Made by a program: the position numbers and the translations under genes. Under the pieces are notes generated by a model, which did no database searches, was not told where the DNA came from, and was given only the letters and a program-made list of their open reading frames with translations. Positions 40,047 through 59,830 of a stretch of DNA of 64,000 nucleotides are shown in pieces; within the stretch, counting starts at the first letter, position 1, and each line of letters opens with the position of its first letter. The stretch comes from Diadema antillarum (Eukaryota), in contig NW_027271973.1 in NCBI RefSeq assembly GCF_040938485.1, positions 1 to 64,000 on the forward strand, written 5' to 3'.

Positions 40047-40789
40047 GATCGTTACATTTCATTTGTCATTTTCGTTTGTGGGCATTTCTAATTCTACATC
40101 TGATTTGGCACTCCGTACCCCATGGTACCATTTGTAGCTTGGGATAGGCCTACGCCGTTGCGTATCACCGTCTCGTCTGGATCTGGATCTGGATCTGTTA
40201 CTCTGAAAAGCTCAGGTTGAGCATAACTACAATAGATCTAACTAGACTCTATGTAGAATCTAACATTAGTTGTGCAATTGCTGTTGTCATGGCGGCTATT
40301 TTCTCATCATTAGCGCTGGCATAAATCGGTGTGGCAAAAATGTCCACACACGTGATCATTCATTCACTCAATGCAAGCACATTGACTGTTACTGAAAGAA
40401 ACTGACACTGTCTTAGAATGGATAATAAATCAAATTTAATTTCCAATCTCATTCAAAGTCAACATAATAAAATCAGCACTTTAATACAATAACATGTAGA
40501 CATATTAATTGTGAAGATTTACAACTGAGCATGTAAATGAGAAAAAAGTTATTATTACATGCACTACCGGGTAATTGTTGCATAATCACAAACAGAAAAA
40601 TATTTTTGATCATAATAATACTAAAAATTATTTTTACACATTCTAAGGTAACCCAGGGTATAGCGCTGAAAAAAAAGTAATAATTCAACAAAATACAACG
40701 TAGTGAATTTTCATTTGGTACCCCAGGGTACCATTAAATTGCATCATTTGTGGGTTTAACACTTAGCACTCTTTTTTAGATGAAGCTTG

Positions 40790-40985: not shown

Positions 40986-41091
40986 CATACCAATAAGCAC
41001 TGAATTGCCTACCAGTACTGAAGTAGACCATCTAGATTACAATACTTTAAAACTCCTTTAGATAACTATGTCAGTTACTACCAATACATTT

Positions 41092-41839
41092 CAGTTCGGG
41101 AAACCCACTCACAAGGGGGGCCCCTCCTTATAAGTAACCCGTCCCCCTTATAAGTAACCCCGTCCCCCTTATAAGTAACCCCCGGGGCACCCCTTATAAG
41201 GAGTCTCCACGCTTTTTTGCAATGCAACGCGAAAATGAAAGGACTGCGGCAATTCGCTTGATTATGTCCATAAAGCTTCACAAGTTTCCTAGTTACTCAC
41301 GAAATTTGAGCAAAATCGGTTTGAGGCATCATATCTAAAATCATGGATTTAAATGCAATGTCAAACGACCCATGCGAATGCTGAAATGCGAGCGATTACT
41401 GGCGTGAGTGTCGCCAGGCGCGGCGGCGCGGCAATGCTTGAGTGCAGACGTGGCGACTGAGTACATGTACTGAGTCGCCACGTCTGCACTCAAGCATTGC
41501 CGCGCCGCCGCGCCTGGCGACACTCGCGCCAGTAATCGCTCGCATTTCAGCATCCGCATGGGTCGTTTGACATCGCATTTAAATCCATGATTTTAGATAT
41601 GATGCCTCAAACCGATTTTGCTCAAATTTCGTGAGTAACTAGGAAACTTGTGAAGCTTTATGGACATAATCAAGCGAATTGCCGCAGTCCTTTCATTTTC
41701 GCGTTGCATTGCGAAAAAGCGTGGAGACTCCTTATAAGGGGTGCCCCGGGGGTTACTTATAAGGGGGACGGGGTTACTTATAAGGGGGACGGGTTACTTA
41801 TAAGGAGGGGCCCCCCTTGTGAGTGGGTTTCCCGAACTG
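41092..41839. mobile_element. 748-bp spacerless palindromic (foldback) element with 4-bp TSD ATTT
   Basis: ATTT|CAGTTCGGGAAACCC ... GGGTTTCCCGAACTG|ATTT; two 374-bp arms with 5 mismatches; centre GTACA|TGTAC between 41465 and 41466. Confidence 0.9.
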
Positions 41840-42721
41840 ATTTTGCCCATACATTGTACTTCTATAGTAGAAGTCTTACAACCTGAGTCTAGTTGTTACC
41901 ATTCATTAAATGTCAGCCAAATAGTAATGAACTTTGGAAGAATCCATCAGACATTATGCTACAGTCTAGATTTTTATGGATTGTTTGAAAAACCCTCTCA
42001 AAAACCCAGGGAAATGCTGCTATGCTGCAATAAGTCATTTAGCTGCCAAGATCTCTTCTAGTTTAATACAGTATATCCCCCTGAGTGAATTGATTTAAAA
42101 TATCTTATGTCAATCAACCAGGTGACTGTGAACTTTGTATGGAAGAAGGCATTACTCCCATTACAAGTGAAACTACAGTCTAGATTTTATAGATTATTCT
42201 ACATCCTTTCACAAAAACCAGGGATGTGCTATACCTGGTTATAATTATGGCTATATACCTGCCAAAAGATCTATACTTTGGAAGAATATAGAAATGATGC
42301 TACGGTCCAGATTTTTCAAGGTTTTTTTTTTCCCCCTACATTCTTTCACAACCAGAGCTGTGATGTGATTCAAGCTGCCAAAATATCTTGCAGTTGTACA
42401 TATCCCCCCGCAATTAGTTGATTTAATGTGGAGTATATTAGTACTTTAACAAGATTCGGCAAAATGTTTTTAGTTTGTCACCACTCCACAGTGTTATTTT
42501 GTAAACTTGGCTCATGATACTTTTGATAAAGTAGTGTCAAAGTTATTACTGTGAGTACTCTATTGGACCAATAACATCATGAAGATCATTCAAACCTTCC
42601 AAGATCTATCTTTTTTAATCATTGTCTTCTGATATCATATAACGTTCTGACTTACATGTATTATTTTTTACTTCGACCTCAGCCTGTGGGAAGTGTGGTC
42701 TCAAGGGGAAAAAAAATCACC

Positions 42722-45700
42722 ATGTCACGCCCAAAGCAGTACGAACCAGGAGATAAAGTCTTTGCGAAGATGAAAGGATGGCCATTTTGGCCAGCAAGGG
42801 TAAGGAAATCAATATTTCTTTTTGCTATACTAAATGATACTGTTTAATCGATCAGGAAAGTACTTCACTTAACTCTTTCCGTAATTGTAAAAAGTAAAAA
42901 GTTACTTCACTGAGTATTCTATCATTTGACGATGCAAATCACTGTTACTTTTACAATATATTCTTCTTTTGTTTGCAGTTTTAATGTTCTTAAATGAATC
43001 TTTGTCGTATTTTATGATGGACACGTTTGATATTGAATATTAATGAATATGGATGATTAGGTTTAGAGACAAAGCAAAGAACATCATGTTCAAATATAGC
43101 TTTGCACATGGTGAGGCTGTCTTACACTAACTCAGGGACTCAGTACCATGTATAGTTAGTACTTGTGTTTATCTGTCTTTCTAATGCTACCTCATGTCTT
43201 TCTCTCTCACTCTCTCTGCATGTTAGGTGGATGATGTTCCTGAAGGAGGGGTGAAGCCACCTCCAAATAAATATCCCATCTTCTTCTTTGGCACACATGA
43301 AACGTAAGCATGGCTTATGTGTCCTTTCTTTCTGTTGTCGCCATTTGCGCTACCATGTACAATATGTTGCCAGTACAGTAATCATGTTTGTTCAAATGAG
43401 AAAAAGGCTGGAAAAAAGAATGAAAAAGATGTGTTTAATGTTGTACATGACTTCTAATATCTCAAAGAGTTCTCATGTATTTTTGTTTTTGTTTGTTTTT
43501 TTCTCTTCTTTTCTAGTGAGTCTTAACCATTAATATGTAAATAAGTTTCAGACTGCTAATCTGAAGTAAGAATTAAATATAAAAGTCATGTATCTTGTGA
43601 TTGAACCACAGAATGCAATATGTTCATGAAGGTGTAGTGATACAGAGTAATTTGATTCAGCATTGAATGTGATGCGCCTTTTTTGTAAATTGAATGCCAT
43701 ACGGTGATGATAATGTCTATGTGATGATATACAGCTTAATTTGTCTTGTCTCATTTAAATTGTGCAGTGGCAGTGCAAGATAACTCAATAAAGTATTGTG
43801 CTGTTCTTTGATACAATATTTCAGGGCATTTATGGGTGTGAAAGACTTGTACCCATATGCACAATTCAAGGAGAAATATGGAAAAGCACACAGAAGATAT
43901 GAGGCCTTCAACATTGGCTTGTGGGAGATCGAAAACAACCCCAATGTCAAGTTTCATGGAGTGGTAAGTATTAAAAGCTCAAAGGGAATTCTTACTTTGT
44001 TAAAATGAAAGAAAAATAGACAAAGTAATATCGTGATTATATTTCTATTAAGTAGTATGATTCCAAATTTTAAAAGAATCTGAGAGAAGATACAAATATC
44101 TCTTTATGTGTATGTGTGTGTATCCTGCTCAATAGAATGTTGCTAAAAGTAGCTAGAAACATTGATGATTTACTGTTGACATGAAACCACTCTCGGATAC
44201 TAACAGCTGTTTCAGAGCAGATGGTGTGTTCATTACCAATGACAGTCTTGTCATATATCCTACAAAGGAGTGTCATGGGCTAGCATTTATATCTCAGTTT
44301 ATGAGAAGAACAGTGTTCAGTTGATGAGAAAAAACAAGTGATAGTCTAAAGCCATAAATGAAACAAATTTGTTCACAGATGTGCCTGCTCCTCTGGAGTT
44401 AAATGAGCACACATGAAAATGTTTGGGTGCCAAGTAGTTGCTGTGCTAAAGATGGTTTTATGTGTTGATCATCCAGTATGGGGTTGCCTTTCTTCCACCA
44501 GCATCCCGGTTCTTCCACTGATGAGGAAACTGGAGGAAGTGCTGTGAAGACAGAAGAAGAGGTGGAGGAGGAGGAGGATGAAGGAGCTGAGATAGCTGAA
44601 AAGGAGCCAGACTCTGATGACTCGGACGGCGGGTTGGTGATCGATGAAGGAGGCAAGAAGCCGAAGAGCAAGGTGATTACAGACAAGACTGGCAGAACTT
44701 GTGGATTTTGTCATTCTTGATGGAATTTGCGAATTTCTGAACGTACATTTCTATTTGTTTAATTTGGTTTCTTTGTTTGGTCATTTGGGTGTCCGTAAAA
44801 GGATCTGAATGTTAGTTACTCCATTTCTTAGCTGTCATGTATTGAAATGAACGAAATATCCTCAGTGAAGTGAAATGCAGTCACAATAGCAATAAAAGCA
44901 TTAACATATATTTTTGAGCTTGAAAAAAAACCACCAAGTCATAAACACTAAAAGTAAATAAATAAAATCTTTCTCTCTTTTTTTTTTGGGGGGGGAGGGG
45001 TTAAATGATGTTATTTGTCAACAAAATACCACAAGGAGATGGGTGTTCAGGGATAGTTTGCTAGGTGTTGTACTGTCTTTATTCTTTAGTAAGTCGGCAC
45101 TCATCGTTTTATTTTATAATTATTACAGGAAAAGAAACCACCAAAGCCAAGAAAGAGGAAAGCCAGTGCAGAAAGTAGTAAGGTAAGTGCCAAATTATGT
45201 CAATTTATTGTCCGTGTGAAAAGTTGAATTTTGTAATGCCTGTTGCAACATTTTCTCTGCATCTGTTTTCAAATGCTTAGAAAAAAAAAAGTCAATATGG
45301 GCAGTAATTTCAGTTGTCTCTGGAACTTTCCTATTTTCGCAAGATTCCATTATACATTCATTTGTAAACATATTTGAAAAGTCTTATTTTTTTCACTAAA
45401 TAAAACGAGCTTCGTAGATGTAAACCAAACCCTACAGTGTGATAACCACACACATTTTATCAGGTCAGTCCAGGATTTATTTTGATTTTGACTTGTGTAG
45501 AGTTGACTTTGCATTGTAACCATAGATTGAATTAAGAACGCATGCTCTACGTTGATGCAGTCAGTCAAAGCTGGAGGCTTTGATTTCTGCAGTATCTTAT
45601 CAACAGTTATGGAAATTCTTGATTCGTGTGGTAATTTTGAATTGTATGAAGTGGATATCTAGCCAAGTGTAAAAATGTAGCACTTGATTGTGTATACCTC

Positions 45701-54700: not shown

Positions 54701-57700
54701 GAGGATGATGGCATCGATGATGATGATATACCTCCAGAGTACGGAAAGGCGTACCGTCAGCAGTCGTCAAGCCAGCCCAACCCTGCTCCTCCGGTCGGCC
54801 AGCGCATCCCCACATTGGGCTCCAGTGCCAATCTCCCCGCAGACATTCAGAGGATTCCGGTGCTGGGGTCCTCCTACCAACCTATGGGACAGCAGCAGCA
54901 GCCTCCAGGACCACCAGGAATGGCTCGGCCCATTGATGACATGGATATATCAGATGGAGAACAGGGAACTCACAGGTGAGTCTCAGATTTCATTTGGACT
55001 GTTCAGAAATTTCTCCGATGTGCTCTTTGCAGTTATCATGGATAGACTTCTTTCTCAGAAAAGTGTCAATACCTGTATTGTCTGCAGAAATATATAATCA
55101 GCTCTTAGCTAAGAAGGTACACATCTGCATAATAGTAAGATGTGCACTATGCTTCTAAATGATTAAATTGCTTTGCTTTTGTAACTTTCCAAGTATGTGT
55201 TCAGCTTTGTAGTTAGCAATTTGATTTTTTTTTCACATTTTATGGAATGAGCTCAAGTTTTTTATGTACGTGTAGTTGTAAACATACAGTCAACCTCGCT
55301 AACCTCGATGTCGGATAAGCCAAATATCACTTACCAGATTTTTCGTTTGGAGTTTCTGTGTGTTACGACTCGCATAGCTCGAAAAACTTATACAAAGTTT
55401 CGTTACCTCGGAGGGAAGTCTAATGTCCCAATCTTAATTAACTTATTGTTTTTCCCAGCGTGTTGCTCGAAGCGAAATGCAAACATCACTCAGCATCTCC
55501 CCCCAATTAAGCGCGCGTAGACAGCGAAGACATGTCATAAATCTTTCCACACTTGATTGTAAATATTTAGAGACCAGAACGATCGTGGGCCCAAAGCAAT
55601 ACACAGCTGGCAAGAAAAATCCCCCACACCTACCTACACACGTGCACGGTATGCACATAGCACCCATGCCAATGGAGTGCTTACAGAAGCACTGCGCTCT
55701 GCCCCATCAACTTCTTTTCTTTAACCACTGTGTTCTGATTTGTGATTGTTATAGTCATGCCATGGGCAGAGATTTCTCAACCGTCGTGGTGCACCTGCTT
55801 AGTTGTTGACAGTTATGCTGTCCAAACATCAATCTCCTGCATAGTGCTTTTTTAACTTTTTTGTTTCATGAGGTTTGTTTCATTATTATTCTCCGCCGAG
55901 AACATAAGCACTGAATACTCTTTTTGTGGTACATGATCTGGAAGTAGGCCAAGCATAACAAAGAATAGATATGATTTAACAACAGTTTATTCAGATAAAT
56001 TTCGATGTTACAGAAGGATACGCTGTAAGATTTTTCAGGCAAATATCTGGAGTAACTTCTTCGCTGAGAAAGCCATCAAATTCCAGTTAGCATGATGATA
56101 TTCTATATGCCATATTTAACTTGTAATAATGCAAAATTCAATGTATACTAAGAGCACTCAAGGAGGTACTACAGTAGTCAAGCTCGCTCAGTACCTCTTG
56201 GAACAATTGATACAAAGTTGCCCATCGACCCCACATGCCCCTAAATGAAAATAGACGTCCGCCGCGAATAGCAAGAATGTGAATTGCATAACTTCAATGT
56301 CCAAATTGTGAAGAAAACTGGGTACAAACTCCTGGCAATAGACCTCTCTGCCATTATCCTTCTGTAGGTCGAAGAGAGCAGCACGTCTATCACTTTCAAG
56401 CATGGCAACGAAGCGAAAATTGAACGTAAAATCGTATCAGGAAAAATACTCAATCCTCACTTTCATGGATGAAAATCCAACATGGAAGAAAAAAGATGTT
56501 GCGGCAAAGTTTAATGTGAAGACCAATACACTGTCGGGCGTGATAAAAAACCGCCACAAAATTGTGCAAGCAGTTGAAAATCCATGTGATGCACGGAAGG
56601 GCATCAAGAGAATGAGGCAGATGGCATTCGACAATGTGGATGCGGCTTTGATCACGTGGTTTCGGCAAAAGGAATCTCTGCCTGATCTCCGGCTAGATGG
56701 GGAGATGCTGCTTGAAAAAGCCAAATACTTTGCCAAAGAATTTGGTCACGAGACAGCTCCTTCACTGAGCTGGGTAAGTCGTTTCAAGAAACGATATGGA
56801 ATAGGCTACATCAAAGAGGCTGGAGAATCTGCTGGGGTGGATGAAGAGCTTATCCAAGGCTGGAAAGATGGAAAGCTGACAGATATTCTGAGGCGTTATG
56901 ACCCGAAGGATATCTACATTGCTGATGAAACTGGTTTATTTTGGCAGATGTTACCAGAGAAGTCGCTCCGTTTTCTTGGCACTACCTTCCATGGAGGTAA
57001 ACAGCAGAATACACGTGTCACTGTTCTAGTGTGCGCTAATATGGATGGCAGCAACAAACTCCCCCTCTTTGTCGTCGGGAAGAGCAAGCGACCACCCGCA
57101 TTTAAGAACGTGAAAAATCTGCCAGTTGCCTACAAAGCCAACAAGAAAGCCTGGATGACAGGGGCATTGTTTGAGGAATGGCTGAGGAAACTTGATGGCA
57201 AAATGGAAGGGAGAAAGATTGCTATGGTCATCAATAACTGTCCGGCTCATCCTCATATTAAGCTGGAGAACATTAAACTTGTGTTTCTGCCACCAAATAC
57301 TACCAGCTTGACCCAGCCAGTGGATGGTGGTGTCATCAGAAATTTGAAACAACACTATCGGCACATCCTGGCATTCAGACGACTTGCAGCGGCAGATGGG
57401 GGAGTTCCCTTCAAATGGGACCTTCTTGACGCTATCATCGCTTTGAAGACGGCATGGAACAGGGTGTCCCAACAGACAATAGCTCATGTATACAGGAATG
57501 TGGGACTTGCTCTTCTGTGTGAGCAAGTAGAGGAAGATGGAGATCGCGGTGAAGAGGGAGGTGTTGATGATGCACAACAATTTCGCGGCATCTGGGAGAG
57601 GTTGGCCGACCTCTTCCCGCTACCTGCCATGGACGAATATGTAGACGTGGATGCAACTGACACAGGTGTCAATCTCTTAACGGATGACCAGATTGTTGAA

Positions 57701-59830
57701 ATCACAGGAGTCAAAGAAGACGGCGAGAGCGATGACGAGAACAGTAATGGTGAAACCAGTAGCCAACAGGGGGAGGATTGTGTGCGCACACCACCTTCGA
57801 TCAGTGAAGTGTGTCAAGCTCTCAACGTGATCAGGCAGTTTGACATCTTTCAGCAAACACCAGCTGAGCTGCAATTGCTTGTGGAGAATTATGAGTTGTA
57901 TCTCATGAGTAATTATAAAAACCATCAGTGACACTTCGCTGTTAAGCATGTTTCCAACGAACTTCTAAATGTTTCATTCCTATTACTGAAGTTATCTAGG
58001 TACTGATCGTGCAAAACCTGTTCTGTTCTTAAAATCAAACAACTTTTTTTATGACTTCCCTTCCATTACTATACACTTTTCAGTGTTCTGACATATCAAT
58101 TAAATACGACAGAAAAATATAAATCTGTAATGTTGGAGTTGAAAGTTTGTTTTCATTGTACAATCTGCTGTCTCATACTTAAAGTAAGGCATGGCTTTAG
58201 TGGTGACTTCATGAAAGAACAGACCATGCAAATGCCCAAACTTGTTTGAACGTACAACTCAATCTTTGGGTTTCATTGATTTCAGTTCTTGCCTGATAAG
58301 TGATCAATGATTATTGTCTCATACTTAAAGAAAGACATGGCTCTATATGTATGATAATTTGTAGTGGTGACTTTGTGAAACAACAGACCTATTAAGAATG
58401 TATGCAGATACCCAAAGTTGTTTGAACATACAACTCAACCTTTGGGTTTCATTGATTTCAGTTCTTACCTGATAAGTGATCAATGATTATTGTCTCATAC
58501 TTAAAGTAAGGCATGGCTTCGCATGTGGTAATTTTAAGTGGTTATTCATGAAACAACAGACCTATGAAGAATATATGCAGATAACCAAAGTTGTTTGAAC
58601 GTACAATTCAACCTTTGGGTTTCATTGATTTCAGTTCTTGCCTGACAAGTGATCAATGACTATTTGTCATAATACTGTACATTTATGATACAAAATTCTT
58701 CAACCTCACCCTACTTGTATGAACTTGAGAGCTAGGTATATGAATAGGCAGAGTACTGATTCTAATTAATGATGACCTCAAAACTATCAACCATTTTCAG
58801 TCCCGACTAATTTGAGGTATGCGAGGTTGACTGTATATTGCAATGATATGTCTTCCATGAATGCAACTGTGATGGAAATGGGACAGTGATATGTCTGGGT
58901 GTTGCTACACTCTTAAAGTAAACATGCCTTGAGGTGCATTTTCGATCACAATACATGTATATTACATTTTTGCTCTTTTGGAAATCAAGCATTAAGAAAT
59001 TCAACAGTCCCTAGTACTTGATATTTGTTGGTTGAAAGTTGAGCTGTTCTTCATGTGTGCATGTGATATCTCAGGAGAACTAAGTCCATTGATAGAAAGT
59101 AGTAAAAACATGAGCACTGTATTTCAGCAAAATGAACGAATTGTCCCCCCTCCCCCCCCCCCAAAAAAAAAAAATGCATCTGGAATTGCTTTAAGTCATC
59201 AAATTTGCCAGCCTGTTCACCATTTCAGATATTTGATGGTGATATTGCTTGTATGTTACTCCTCATTTTCAGGTTTCAGAAATGATATTAACCTCAAATT
59301 GTCAGAACAAAATTCTGACAAACCTCATTCTCTCGTACAGTGGCACATCTTTCCTGAGAACATTCTGTGAGGCTCAATTCACAACTACATGAATTGTAGA
59401 CTAGTGCCTTTGTGATTTTGCTCTTGTGAACATATATTTCCTTGTCTATAATGCATTTACGCAAAAATTTGACAGATGTTGGCATATTTTCTAAAATGAC
59501 TGTCATCTACTGTAAAAGTGGAAATTTTCGCGGTGTTGAAATTTTCGCGCATTTCGCGCAATCAGAAACTAGCGCGAAAATAAAAGCATGCGAATATTTT
59601 TGCTTGCCATATGTTCCTGTGCGTGATGTCTTGATTCCGCGGAATTAAAAACACGCGAAACTCTTCTCACCCGGCCAAGCGCGAAAAATTAGTCGCGCGA
59701 AAATATTCACTTTTACAGTATGCCAGACATGTGCTATATTTGGGTTTGATTCTTCTACACACACAGAGCTAAAACCGATCAAGGTGACCAGGCCTTTAGT
59801 GACGACTGCATGGACCTCGACTCAGACTGA
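42722..59830 (+). CDS. HDGFL2: HDGF-related protein 2 / LEDGF-family chromatin reader (PWWP, K/E coiled coil, IBD); join(42722..42799,43227..43303,43825..43963,44502..44672,45129..45182,45870..45980,46935..47154,47763..47859,48563..49277,49748..49812,50564..50586,51535..51599,52040..52147,52799..52958,53523..54975,59767..59830), 1199 aa
   Basis: [18 protein letters not shown]|VDD...[12 protein letters not shown]|AF...LYPY..KEKYGK...[12 protein letters not shown] is an HDGF-type PWWP domain. [14 protein letters not shown]|..FVQTIKK|[22 protein letters not shown] is an IBD. The 16 GT-AG exons sum to 3600 nt in one open frame. HDGFL2 versus PSIP1 orthology cannot be resolved; this is likely their pro-ortholog. 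Confidence 0.88.
46225..46880. mobile_element. Tigger-like MITE (11640 family) split by a HINE insertion
   Basis: Left piece GTGGACTCCCATTATAATC...TTTCGTTATATCAAAATTTCG and right piece CGTGTTCGTTATAATGGGAGTGCACTG|TA match the two ends of 11640-12098. Confidence 0.7.
46310..46785 (+). mobile_element. Helentron-associated non-autonomous element (HINE / DINE-1-like)
   Basis: 5' AACAACTAGAAAAGCACTCTGAGAGCGCAGACCTCCGCCAAG; (ACAA)n microsatellite; 3' CTTGGCGGAGGT complementary subTIR with a short hairpin ACCTCC..GGAGGT. Confidence 0.8.
50204..50288. mobile_element. 85-bp piggyBac-like miniature element
   Basis: TTAA|CCCGTTGAGGAC ... GTCTTCAACGGG|TTAA. Confidence 0.8.
52400..52785 (+). mobile_element. 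Degenerate SINE with a (TAT/TGT)n tail abutting a splice acceptor
   Basis: TGTCCTTGAG...AAGACACT...CCCAGCTGTACAAAT core-like segment and a simple-repeat tail. Confidence 0.5.
56402..57931 (+). CDS. pogo/Tigger (TIGD4/6-like) transposase, 509 aa; second catalytic Asp replaced by Asn
   Basis: CENP-B-type HTH domains ([11 protein letters not shown]; [13 protein letters not shown]); ADETGLFW (D175), INNCPAH (N278), QPVDGGVI (D308); DD29D spacing. Confidence 0.92.
   Translation: MATKRKLNVKSYQEKYSILTFMDENPTWKKKDVAAKFNVKTNTLSGVIKNRHKIVQAVENPCDARKGIKRMRQMAFDNVDAALITWFRQKESLPDLRLDGEMLLEKAKYFAKEFGHETAPSLSWVSRFKKRYGIGYIKEAGESAGVDEELIQGWKDGKLTDILRRYDPKDIYIADETGLFWQMLPEKSLRFLGTTFHGGKQQNTRVTVLVCANMDGSNKLPLFVVGKSKRPPAFKNVKNLPVAYKANKKAWMTGALFEEWLRKLDGKMEGRKIAMVINNCPAHPHIKLENIKLVFLPPNTTSLTQPVDGGVIRNLKQHYRHILAFRRLAAADGGVPFKWDLLDAIIALKTAWNRVSQQTIAHVYRNVGLALLCEQVEEDGDRGEEGGVDDAQQFRGIWERLADLFPLPAMDEYVDVDATDTGVNLLTDDQIVEITGVKEDGESDDENSNGETSSQQGEDCVRTPPSISEVCQALNVIRQFDIFQQTPAELQLLVENYELYLMSNYKNHQ
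58169..58665. repeat. Three imperfect tandem units (146, 176, about 175 bp) inside the Tigger 3' region
   Basis: Units start TGTCTCATACTTAAAG at 58169, 58315 and 58491 and share CTTTGGGTTTCATTGATTTCAGTTCTT. Confidence 0.9.
59510..59718. mobile_element. TA-target MITE (CTGTAAAA termini)
   Basis: TA|CTGTAAAAGTG ... CACTTTTACAG|TA; many TTCGCG/CGCGAA repeats. Confidence 0.88.

What the first reader, a model, noticed from the sequence alone, without database searches (positions are those of the whole stretch)
41088..41843. 748-bp perfect palindrome with zero spacer, 4-bp TSD and eight CTTATAAG boxes
Two 374-bp arms meet directly at GTACA|TGTAC and are flanked by ATTT on both sides, so the whole palindrome appears to have inserted as a unit. 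Each arm has four copies of the self-complementary 8-mer CTTATAAG (partly in a 20-21 bp tandem) and a very GC-rich core near the centre. Spacerless palindromes this long are normally unstable (cruciform extrusion and cleavage), yet this one has persisted long enough to gain 5 mismatches. It probably lies in intron 1 of the HDGFL2-like gene, so the pre-mRNA would form a 374-bp dsRNA, a substrate for ADAR or Dicer. An AWWT target is reminiscent of Sola1, but CAG termini do not clearly fit a superfamily I can name. It may be an undescribed hairpin-type element that arose by fold-back replication of one transposon end.
Basis: partly seen in the sequence, partly recalled or inferred. Interest (0 to 1): 0.75.

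Follow-up and report, generated by a model that had tools for sequence, protein, structure and literature searches.

The report
Hemizygous copy of a palindromic MITE
The 748-base spacerless palindrome is real, but it is one recently inserted copy of a non-coding jumping-gene family with about 800 copies' worth of ends in this assembly; the kind is ordinary, though its many young copies show how long palindromes decay and are made symmetric again.

Summary
In detail: two 374-nt arms, no spacer, 5 mismatches, ATTT on both sides, eight CTTATAAG boxes. It is not unique. The exact 25-nt end occurs 809+818 times in the 1.75-Gb two-haplotype assembly. Of 51 copies examined, 49 have exact 4-bp duplications (A-W-W-T-like, ATAT commonest). 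None codes for a protein.

The sister-haplotype contig and contigs of two read sets carry the precise empty site with a single ATTT. This copy is therefore a recent, hemizygous insertion and not an assembly artefact.

About 38% of copies with intact inner arms are spacerless; the rest keep 1, 10 or 12 nt. The 10-nt spacer is the relic of a ~240-nt inner segment that survives at about 37 loci. At only 0.6% divergence, more than half of the copies are structurally damaged, mostly by loss of one arm from the centre outwards.

Two of the five mismatches here recur together in another copy, and two more recur elsewhere, so most were probably inherited. Eleven substitutions are mirrored in both arms of single copies (0.07 expected by chance), so arms get re-symmetrised.

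No autonomous partner was found, and the element is Sola-like only by its target site. It is a foldback-type MITE, an ordinary kind. Other first-stage notes report similar palindromes elsewhere in this genome.

The parts
41088..41091 (.). left copy of the 4-bp target-site duplication ATTT
   Evidence: the allelic contig and read contigs have a single ATTT at the empty site
41092..41465 (+). left arm (374 nt), starts CAGTTCGGGAAACCC; 1 difference from the family consensus (position 266 G>A)
41466..41839 (-). right arm (374 nt), inverted copy of the left; 4 differences from the consensus (127, 286, 314, 368), of which 286, 314 and 368 recur in other copies
41840..41843 (.). right copy of the TSD ATTT
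41117..41208 (+). subterminal repeat block of the left arm: four CTTATAAG boxes in C-rich 20-21-nt units (41127, 41147, 41168, 41193); inferred transposase-binding sites
   Evidence: the function is inferred only
41723..41814 (-). mirror subterminal repeat block of the right arm (boxes at 41731, 41756, 41777, 41797)
41398..41431 (+). GC-rich core of the left arm (79% G+C); its mirror is at 41500-41533
41461..41470 (.). centre GTACA|TGTAC with no spacer, flanked by the asymmetric TGAG/TGAG variant (a G/C mismatch 7 nt from the axis, arm position 368)
   Evidence: 80 sites in the genome have the GTACATGTAC centre, and at least 5 other loci have the same flanking variant
42758..42838 (+). context: first coding exon of a PWWP (HDGF-family) gene, [26 protein letters not shown], 919 bp downstream of the element
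   Evidence: (PF00855, E 5e-4 on 27 aa)

Best explanation
The palindrome is one copy of a young, high-copy, non-autonomous cut-and-paste DNA transposon of foldback (whole-element inverted repeat) type, in effect a 0.75-kb MITE. It encodes nothing.

Inferred mechanism: a transposase supplied in trans recognises the CAGTTCGGG... ends, and probably the CTTATAAG-containing subterminal repeats. It makes 4-nt staggered cuts at A-W-W-T-like targets, with ATAT the optimum inside Y-ATAT-R. This is the target signature reported for Sola1/Sola2 transposons.

Shown: this copy landed at an ATTT 0.9 kb upstream of the start codon of a PWWP gene on one haplotype only. It carries mismatches that recur in other copies and were probably mostly inherited from its donor.

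The palindromic structure is not protected. Across the family the centre is remodelled (0, 1, 2, 10 or 12 nt, or short duplications), one arm is often lost from the centre outwards, and substitutions are sometimes copied from one arm to the other.
For: Shown:
- Multicopy: the exact 25-nt end occurs 809 times forward and 818 reverse, with the control at 0. The first-look search gave 537 candidates at 98-100% identity.
- TSD: 49 of 51 copies have identical 4-bp flanks. Position 1 is A in 39/49 and position 4 is T in 43/49. ATAT occurs 13 times and TTAA 0 times.
- Empty site: the allelic contig C276 has a 4-nt overlap of the flanks. Contigs of runs X1 and X2 show the joint 41087->41840. X2, from a different sample and study, shows only the empty allele.
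- Non-coding: the longest open frame is 83 codons.
- Youth: mean 0.59% substitutions against the consensus.
- Asymmetric variants are inherited by many loci. The TGTG, CCTA and TGAG centre-flank variants each occur at several loci, so the whole duplex palindrome is what moves.
- Spacerless copies are common: 80 GTACATGTAC centres, and 19 of the first 50 centre-intact sites are spacerless.

From the literature: an AWWT 4-bp target is a hallmark of Sola1 (PMC3845634) and is also seen in Sola2 (PMC3627910).

Inferred: the transposase-binding role of the CTTATAAG repeats, and the superfamily.
Against: - No autonomous partner or transposase was found. All 16 unpaired ends in contigs C1-C30 are deletion derivatives, diverged ends or a nested insertion. 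Only 7 sites have the terminal 15-mer followed by anything other than the family sequence.
- The ends (CAG...) do not resemble the insect Sola1 TIR listed in PMC3845634, and only 37% of TSDs are strictly AWWT.
- Plain cut-and-paste does not by itself explain the mirrored substitutions.
- Hemizygosity at other loci is only suggested and could not be made precise.
Confidence: 0.85

Rival explanations
1. Self-symmetrising foldback element. Palindromic copies are repeatedly regenerated by snap-back (template-switch) DNA synthesis, for instance during gap repair after excision or at stalled forks. One arm is then copied from the other, so spacerless palindromes are 'born perfect'. This adds to the best explanation and does not exclude it.
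For: - In 15 cleanly aligned, order-sampled copies, 11 substitutions are present at the mirror position of both arms, against 0.07 expected by chance, alongside 42 single-arm ones.
- Four copies carry mirrored changes seen in no other copy: L057 at 281, L058 at 105, L059 at 209, L064 at 150/151.
- Two mirrored variants (231 T>C, 294 A>C) each mark three copies at different loci.
- The centre is hypervariable, with more than 20 configurations among about 40 copies, including inverted or tandem duplications of the inner 24-74 nt.
- About 37 loci carry a longer inner segment, often as inverted duplicates of unequal length.
Against: - Asymmetric variants are faithfully inherited by many loci, so symmetrisation is occasional and does not happen at every transposition.
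- Arm-to-arm gene conversion in a hairpin or cruciform would also give mirrored changes.
- Assembly or polishing of a palindrome could in principle symmetrise arms. Raw long reads were not available, because the laid runs are contigs.
- The sample is small, 15 copies out of about 800.
Confidence: 0.3
2. The family belongs to a superfamily other than Sola that also makes 3-4-bp duplications (Academ, the Chapaev branch of CMC, or an undescribed one). The AWWT-like target would then be a coincidence of AT-rich site preference.
For: - No transposase was found, so the assignment rests on the TSD alone.
- Only 18/49 TSDs are strictly AWWT.
- The ends are unlike the documented insect Sola1 TIR (PMC3845634).
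- Sola, Academ and Kolobok lack Pfam models (PMC5751038), so no family scan was possible.
Against: - Positions 1 (A, 80%) and 4 (T, 88%) are strongly constrained and the target is palindromic, as reported for Sola1 (AWWT/AWDT, PMC3845634).
- Ginger is excluded by its TGTNR ends and its RTATAY or CCGG targets (PMC2836005).
- piggyBac and Kolobok are excluded because no TSD is TTAA.
- hAT and Mutator are excluded by TSD length.
Confidence: 0.4
3. Assembly artefact: a fold-back chimera of a long read or a mis-join.
For: Spacerless palindromes are a known chimera signature, and short-read contigs do not span the centre.
Against: - The same structure sits at dozens of examined loci with unique flanks on both sides and exact TSDs.
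- The locus has a precise empty allele.
- The element is present at high depth in independent runs and in another organism.
Confidence: 0.01
4. A host-selected hairpin gene or regulatory element, for example a source of small RNAs or a promoter module of the PWWP gene.
For: It lies 0.9 kb upstream of the PWWP start codon. Rfam miRNA-precursor models give sub-threshold hits on the centre.
Against: - The insertion is absent from the sister haplotype and from a second individual.
- The Rfam hits are below the gathering score, as expected for any perfect hairpin.
- No RNA evidence was available.
Confidence: 0.03

Closest known systems
Sola1/Sola2 non-autonomous elements (e.g. the Sola1_NA MITEs of Bombyx and Rhodnius, PMC3845634; Sola2 elements of dictyostelids, PMC3627910)
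   Same: 4-bp TSD with an A-W-W-T-type target; short, non-coding, homogeneous, tens to hundreds of copies; presumably mobilised in trans.
   Different: The ends are unrelated in sequence (GGACCG... there, CAGTTCGGG... here). Those MITEs have 28-36-bp TIRs around a unique middle, whereas here the whole element is the inverted repeat. No Sola transposase is linked to this family.
Classical foldback transposons (Drosophila FB, Tetris; the sea-urchin TU elements cited in PMC4079207)
   Same: The arms make up nearly the whole element. There are subterminal short repeats, no coding capacity, and the autonomous partner is usually not found.
   Different: Those have 8-10-bp TSDs and are assigned to Mutator (PMC4079207). 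Their arms are long, variable arrays of tandem repeats around a middle domain. Here the TSD is 4 bp, the arms are uniform mostly unique sequence, and the middle domain is 0-12 nt.
Ginger2/TDD transposons (PMC2836005)
   Same: 4-bp TSD in an AT-rich palindromic target.
   Different: Ginger ends are TGTNR and the target is RTATAY. Here the ends are CAG and the target is Y-ATAT-R.
Centre-directed revision of long palindromes in yeast and mammalian cells (my own knowledge of the 'centre-break' and replication-slippage literature, not checked here)
   Same: Small insertions and deletions at the symmetry axis, and deletions that start at the centre and remove part of one arm.
   Different: Here it is seen as standing variation among hundreds of germ-line transposon copies, not in an engineered locus. 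In 12 of 12 centre-anchored truncations the other arm aligns to within about 7 nt of its inner end.

Membership tests
MITE / non-autonomous TIR transposon | terminal inverted repeats flanked by a target-site duplication of fixed length | tested here: met
   49/51 copies have exact 4-bp flanking repeats; the empty allele has a single ATTT
MITE / non-autonomous TIR transposon | short, non-coding, high copy number, homogeneous | tested here: met
   748 bp; longest open frame 83 codons; 809+818 exact ends; 0.59% mean divergence
Sola (Sola1/Sola2) | 4-bp TSD with AWWT-type target preference | tested here: met
   A 39/49, W 37/49, W 39/49, T 43/49; strict AWWT 18/49 against about 4% expected from base composition (my estimate); the criterion is from PMC3845634 and PMC3627910
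Sola (Sola1/Sola2) | autonomous relative encoding a Sola-type DDE transposase | tested here: inconclusive
   No long relative among 59 elements/ends of contigs C1-C30. ORFs near solo arms are a LINE, a Crypton-like recombinase and a host acidic exon. There is no Pfam model for Sola (PMC5751038).
Sola (Sola1/Sola2) | termini like those of described Sola elements | tested here: inconclusive
   Only the insect Sola1 TIR printed in PMC3845634 could be compared, and it shows no resemblance. Bao et al. 2009 is not held.
Foldback elements of FB/TU/Tetris type (Mutator-related) | inverted arms forming almost the whole element | tested here: met
   374+374 nt with 0 spacer
Foldback elements of FB/TU/Tetris type (Mutator-related) | 8-10-bp TSD | tested here: not met
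   The TSD is 4 bp; the criterion is from PMC4079207
Ginger1/Ginger2 | TGTNR termini; CCGG or RTATAY target | tested here: not met
   The ends are CAGTT; the target is Y-ATAT-R; the criterion is from PMC2836005
hAT | 8-bp TSD (CAG-type ends are common) | tested here: not met
   CAG ends are present, but the TSD is 4 bp; the criterion is from my own knowledge
piggyBac / Kolobok | TTAA target duplication | tested here: not met
   0 of 49 TSDs are TTAA

The most novel reading that the evidence does not exclude
The family is a self-symmetrising foldback transposon. Copies are occasionally rebuilt by snap-back synthesis from one arm. That would explain three things together: the mirrored private substitutions, the hypervariable centres, and the truncations in which one arm stays whole up to the axis. 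Its roughly 800 young copies would then be a natural germ-line assay of how an animal genome makes, tolerates and destroys long perfect palindromes, driven by a Sola-like transposase not yet linked to any foldback element.
Probability: 0.3. Interest if true: 0.55.

Novelty: new member of a known kind. Interest (0 to 1): 0.3.

Why it matters
For annotation, this and similar 'mystery palindromes' reported in the same genome are transposon copies and should be masked as one family. They are polymorphic between haplotypes, so they can break short-read assemblies and mimic structural variants.

For biology, the kind is known: foldback structure has evolved in several superfamilies. This family combines three useful properties: very recent activity, hundreds of nearly identical perfect palindromes, and a two-haplotype assembly. 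Rates and patterns of palindrome decay, such as centre remodelling, one-sided arm loss and arm-to-arm copying, can therefore be read directly.

If a Sola-type partner is found, it would link the foldback architecture to a superfamily other than Mutator or P.

Tried and rejected
1. Autonomous partner. All unpaired exact ends in contigs C1-C30 were fetched. They are solo arms that share nothing beyond the arm, truncated copies, or copies with a diverged end. The one pair 10.2 kb apart (L031/L032) is a family copy split by a nested 9.5-kb element with its own 64-bp TIRs and no ORF of 150 aa or more.
2. The 526-aa ORF near the solo arm L033 has no Pfam or Atlas hit. It is an acidic low-complexity frame that I take for a host exon, not a transposase.
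3. The terminal 15-mer followed by a non-family base gave only 7 sites, one of them the L036 deletion derivative. That derivative's junction is unique in the genome, so there is no evidence that it transposed.
4. Whole-locus queries meant to find alleles were swamped by family copies. Flank-plus-60-nt queries show allelic contigs that stop at or before the element at 3 loci. The right-flank checks were ambiguous: there is a structural difference at L014, and another repeat floods L005.
5. Rfam gave only sub-threshold miRNA-hairpin hits on the centre.
6. A metagenome scan with the inner-segment 29-mer found nothing.
7. A literature search for the terminal 15-mer found nothing. Bao et al. 2009 is not held.
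8. The 818-bp extra insertion on the sister haplotype, 225 bp to the right of this element, does not start with this family's end next to the expected flank.
Long relatives seen only as coordinates could therefore not be inspected.

Full report
**1. The observation**

The sequence is as described. The repeat finder gives a 375-nt inverted repeat, 99% complementary, with no base between the arms. With the outermost T/A pair removed, the element is 41092-41839, CAG...CTG, 748 bp, with ATTT on both sides. The arms differ at five mirror positions: 127, 266, 286, 314 and 368 counted from the outer end.

CTTATAAG occurs eight times in the element. There are nine in the whole 64-kb window, where 1.2 are expected, and none of 100 shuffles reaches nine. 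The boxes are spaced 20, 21 and 25 nt apart. A 34-nt stretch of 79% G+C lies at arm positions 307-340. As single-stranded DNA the element folds into one hairpin of -505.8 kcal/mol. No frame is open for more than 83 codons.

**2. It is a family, not a singular object**

A search of the window's own 1.75-Gb assembly with one arm gave 537 first-look candidates, and the scored ones were 98-100% identical. The exact 25-nt end occurs 809 times forward and 818 times in reverse, with the reversed control at zero.

I examined 51 copies that have both ends:
- 30 were picked by similarity.
- About 20 were taken in contig order, which is unbiased with respect to sequence.

Of the 51, 49 are flanked by an identical 4-bp repeat. 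Position 1 is A in 39/49 and position 4 is T in 43/49. The middle positions are mostly T then A. ATAT is the commonest TSD (13), TTAA never occurs, and the neighbouring bases give Y-ATAT-R. Mean divergence from the family consensus is 0.59%.

**3. The empty site**

The assembly holds both haplotypes. The 700 nt to the left of the element match contig C276 at 100% down to base 154048. The right flank matches from base 154051 on the same (minus) strand. The two flanks therefore overlap by exactly four bases, a single ATTT.

Independent confirmation comes from public runs. Contigs of X1 and X2 (same organism, different samples and studies) join 41087 to 41840 with four shared letters. In X2 this is the only form seen at that place.

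So the element inserted as a unit, made a 4-bp duplication, is hemizygous in the assembled individual and is absent from a second one. That disposes of the fold-back-chimera artefact, even though short-read contigs cannot span the centre.

At three other loci the allelic contigs match the flank but not the first 60 nt of the element. Checks of the right flanks were ambiguous. General hemizygosity is therefore suggested, not shown.

**4. Are other copies spacerless?**

Partly. A pattern that requires both inner arm anchors, with 0-12 nt between the two GTACs, finds 349 sites. Eighty of them have the window's GTACATGTAC centre.

The first 50 sites in contig order break down as follows:

| Centre type | Sites |
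|---|---|
| GTACATGTAC (spacerless) | 10 |
| GTACGTAC (spacerless) | 9 |
| a single central base | 8 |
| 10-nt spacer GAAAGTCTCC or a point variant | 14 |
| 12 nt | 4 |
| other short insertions or duplications | 5 |

In the copies I hold there are more than 20 centre configurations among about 40 copies. They include duplications of the inner 24-74 nt of an arm.

Each main type sits at many loci with different TSDs, so spacerless copies themselves transpose. Asymmetric variants next to the centre are also inherited. TGTG/CTCA, CCTA/TGAG and the window's TGAG/TGAG each occur at several loci. This indicates that the whole duplex palindrome is what moves.

**5. The five mismatches**

The family consensus at the five positions is T, G, A, T, G. 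The left arm departs once (266) and the right arm four times. Three of these recur elsewhere:
- 286 A>G, 314 T>C and 368 G>C each recur in other copies.
- L009 has 286 and 368 together.
- The centre-flank variant is shared with at least five loci.

With flanks identical between the filled and empty alleles, most of the mismatches were probably inherited from the donor copy rather than gained here.

**6. The palindromes are unstable**

I classified 38 elements sampled through their ends in contig order:

| State | Copies |
|---|---|
| both arms intact | 16 |
| inner part of one arm lost | 12 |
| solo arm | 7 |
| outer end lost | 3 |

In all 12 copies that lost the inner part of one arm, the other arm aligns to within about 7 nt of its inner end. 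At 0.6% sequence divergence, well over half of the copies are therefore structurally damaged, and the damage is centred on the axis. This is what is expected of long palindromes from my own knowledge of the centre-break and slippage literature.

**7. A longer relative**

The junctions of several 'truncated' copies continue the 10-nt spacer into a common sequence. L055 and L062 share about 237 nt of it at 99% identity. A search with this segment finds about 37 loci, often as inverted duplicates of unequal length.

The 10-nt spacer is thus the relic of a longer inner segment. The 748-bp forms are the most successful short derivatives of a larger foldback element. The direction of change (central deletion or fold-back) stays open.

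**8. Mirrored substitutions**

In 15 cleanly aligned, order-sampled copies, 11 substitutions are present at the mirror position of both arms. Chance predicts 0.07, and 42 substitutions are in one arm only.
- Some mirrored changes are private to one copy: L057 at 281, L058 at 105 (which destroys box 4 in both arms), L059 at 209, and L064 at 150/151.
- Two mark small subfamilies: 231 T>C and 294 A>C.

Arms are therefore sometimes copied from one another, either by conversion within a hairpin or cruciform, or by snap-back re-synthesis. This is the one result that plain cut-and-paste does not explain. An assembly artefact that symmetrises arms cannot be excluded without raw long reads.

**9. What moves it**

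No partner was found. Unpaired ends are deletion derivatives. The only distant pair is a copy split by an unrelated 9.5-kb non-coding TIR element. ORFs near solo arms are a LINE, a Crypton-like recombinase and an acidic frame that I take for a host exon. The terminal 15-mer is almost never followed by foreign sequence.

Classification therefore rests on the target. A 4-bp AWWT preference is called a hallmark of Sola1 (PMC3845634) and is seen in Sola2 (PMC3627910). The other candidates are excluded as follows:
- Ginger, by its TGTNR ends and different target (PMC2836005).
- piggyBac and Kolobok, by the absence of TTAA.
- hAT and Mutator-type foldbacks, by TSD length (PMC4079207).

Sola has no Pfam model (PMC5751038), so I could not scan for it. 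I put Sola at about 0.4 to 0.5 and leave Academ, CMC-Chapaev or an unknown superfamily open.

**10. Gene context**

The only HDGF-type PWWP exon, [26 protein letters not shown], starts at 42758 on the plus strand. That is 919 bp downstream of the element. A pyrimidine tract ending in CAG lies 39 nt before the ATG, so a 5'-UTR intron containing the element is possible.

An IspD/CRPPA-like gene runs the other way, with its first coding exon near 35.7 kb. The element may therefore equally lie in a shared upstream region. No RNA run holds the stretch, so the dsRNA/ADAR/Dicer idea is untested.

**11. Other organisms**

The element, but not its unique flanks, is present at very high depth in a run of a second organism. 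An internally deleted copy with the GAAAGT centre is present in a third organism, and parts occur in marine metagenomes. Names are coded, so vertical descent and transfer cannot be told apart. Earlier notes of this scan call the genome a sea urchin's. I did not verify that.

**12. Verdict**

This is a real, recently inserted, hemizygous copy of a foldback-type MITE with a Sola-like target. It is a new member of a known kind. The family-level patterns of palindrome decay and arm symmetrisation are the interesting part.

Noticed in passing
window 56402-57931 (+): Intact 509-aa ORF of a pogo/Tigger-type transposase (DDE_1 E 3e-43, HTH_Tnp_Tc5, CENP-B_N). It could be an active or domesticated copy.
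   Followed up: partly
window 42064-42068 versus sister contig C276:153005-153822: The other haplotype carries an extra ~818 bp here, with a 5-nt overlap of the flanks (TAATA), only 225 bp from the palindrome. A pattern test for this family's end next to the flank found nothing, so it is probably another element.
   Followed up: partly
window 34141-34494 and ~35679 (-): Exons of an IspD/CRPPA-like cytidylyltransferase gene (PF01128, E 5e-11), transcribed away from the PWWP gene. The palindrome lies in the 7-kb region between the two start codons.
   Followed up: partly
L031:319-9819 (G000:C29:1009719-1019219): A 9.5-kb non-coding element with 64-bp TIRs (94% complementary) is inserted in a family copy at arm position 106-108, with a 3-bp duplication.
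   Followed up: partly
about 37 loci listed (e.g. G000:C707:635456-635927, C2874:11558-11897): Longer relatives carry a ~240-nt inner segment, often as inverted duplicates of unequal length. They may correspond to the 1.4-kb palindromes noted by other first-stage readers in this genome. They could not be fetched.
   Followed up: partly
window 40392-40760: An older dispersed repeat (511 first-look candidates, 75-83% identity) lies directly left of the insertion site.
   Followed up: no
L005:2719-2948 (G000:C849:639142-639371): Another very young repeat: a 230-nt stretch with more than 40 copies at 97-100% identity, some of them tandemly spaced about 3.3 kb apart on C693, C574, C721 and C28.
   Followed up: no
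L042:4275-7820 (+); L039:3523-4707 (-): A 1182-aa LINE ORF (endonuclease, RT, PHD finger) and a Crypton-like tyrosine-recombinase ORF (DUF3504 + Phage_integrase) lie near family copies and are unrelated to them.
   Followed up: no
runs X5, X14 and marine metagenomes: The family is present at 95-100% identity in at least two other coded organisms and in marine metagenome runs. This points to close relatives or horizontal transfer.
   Followed up: no
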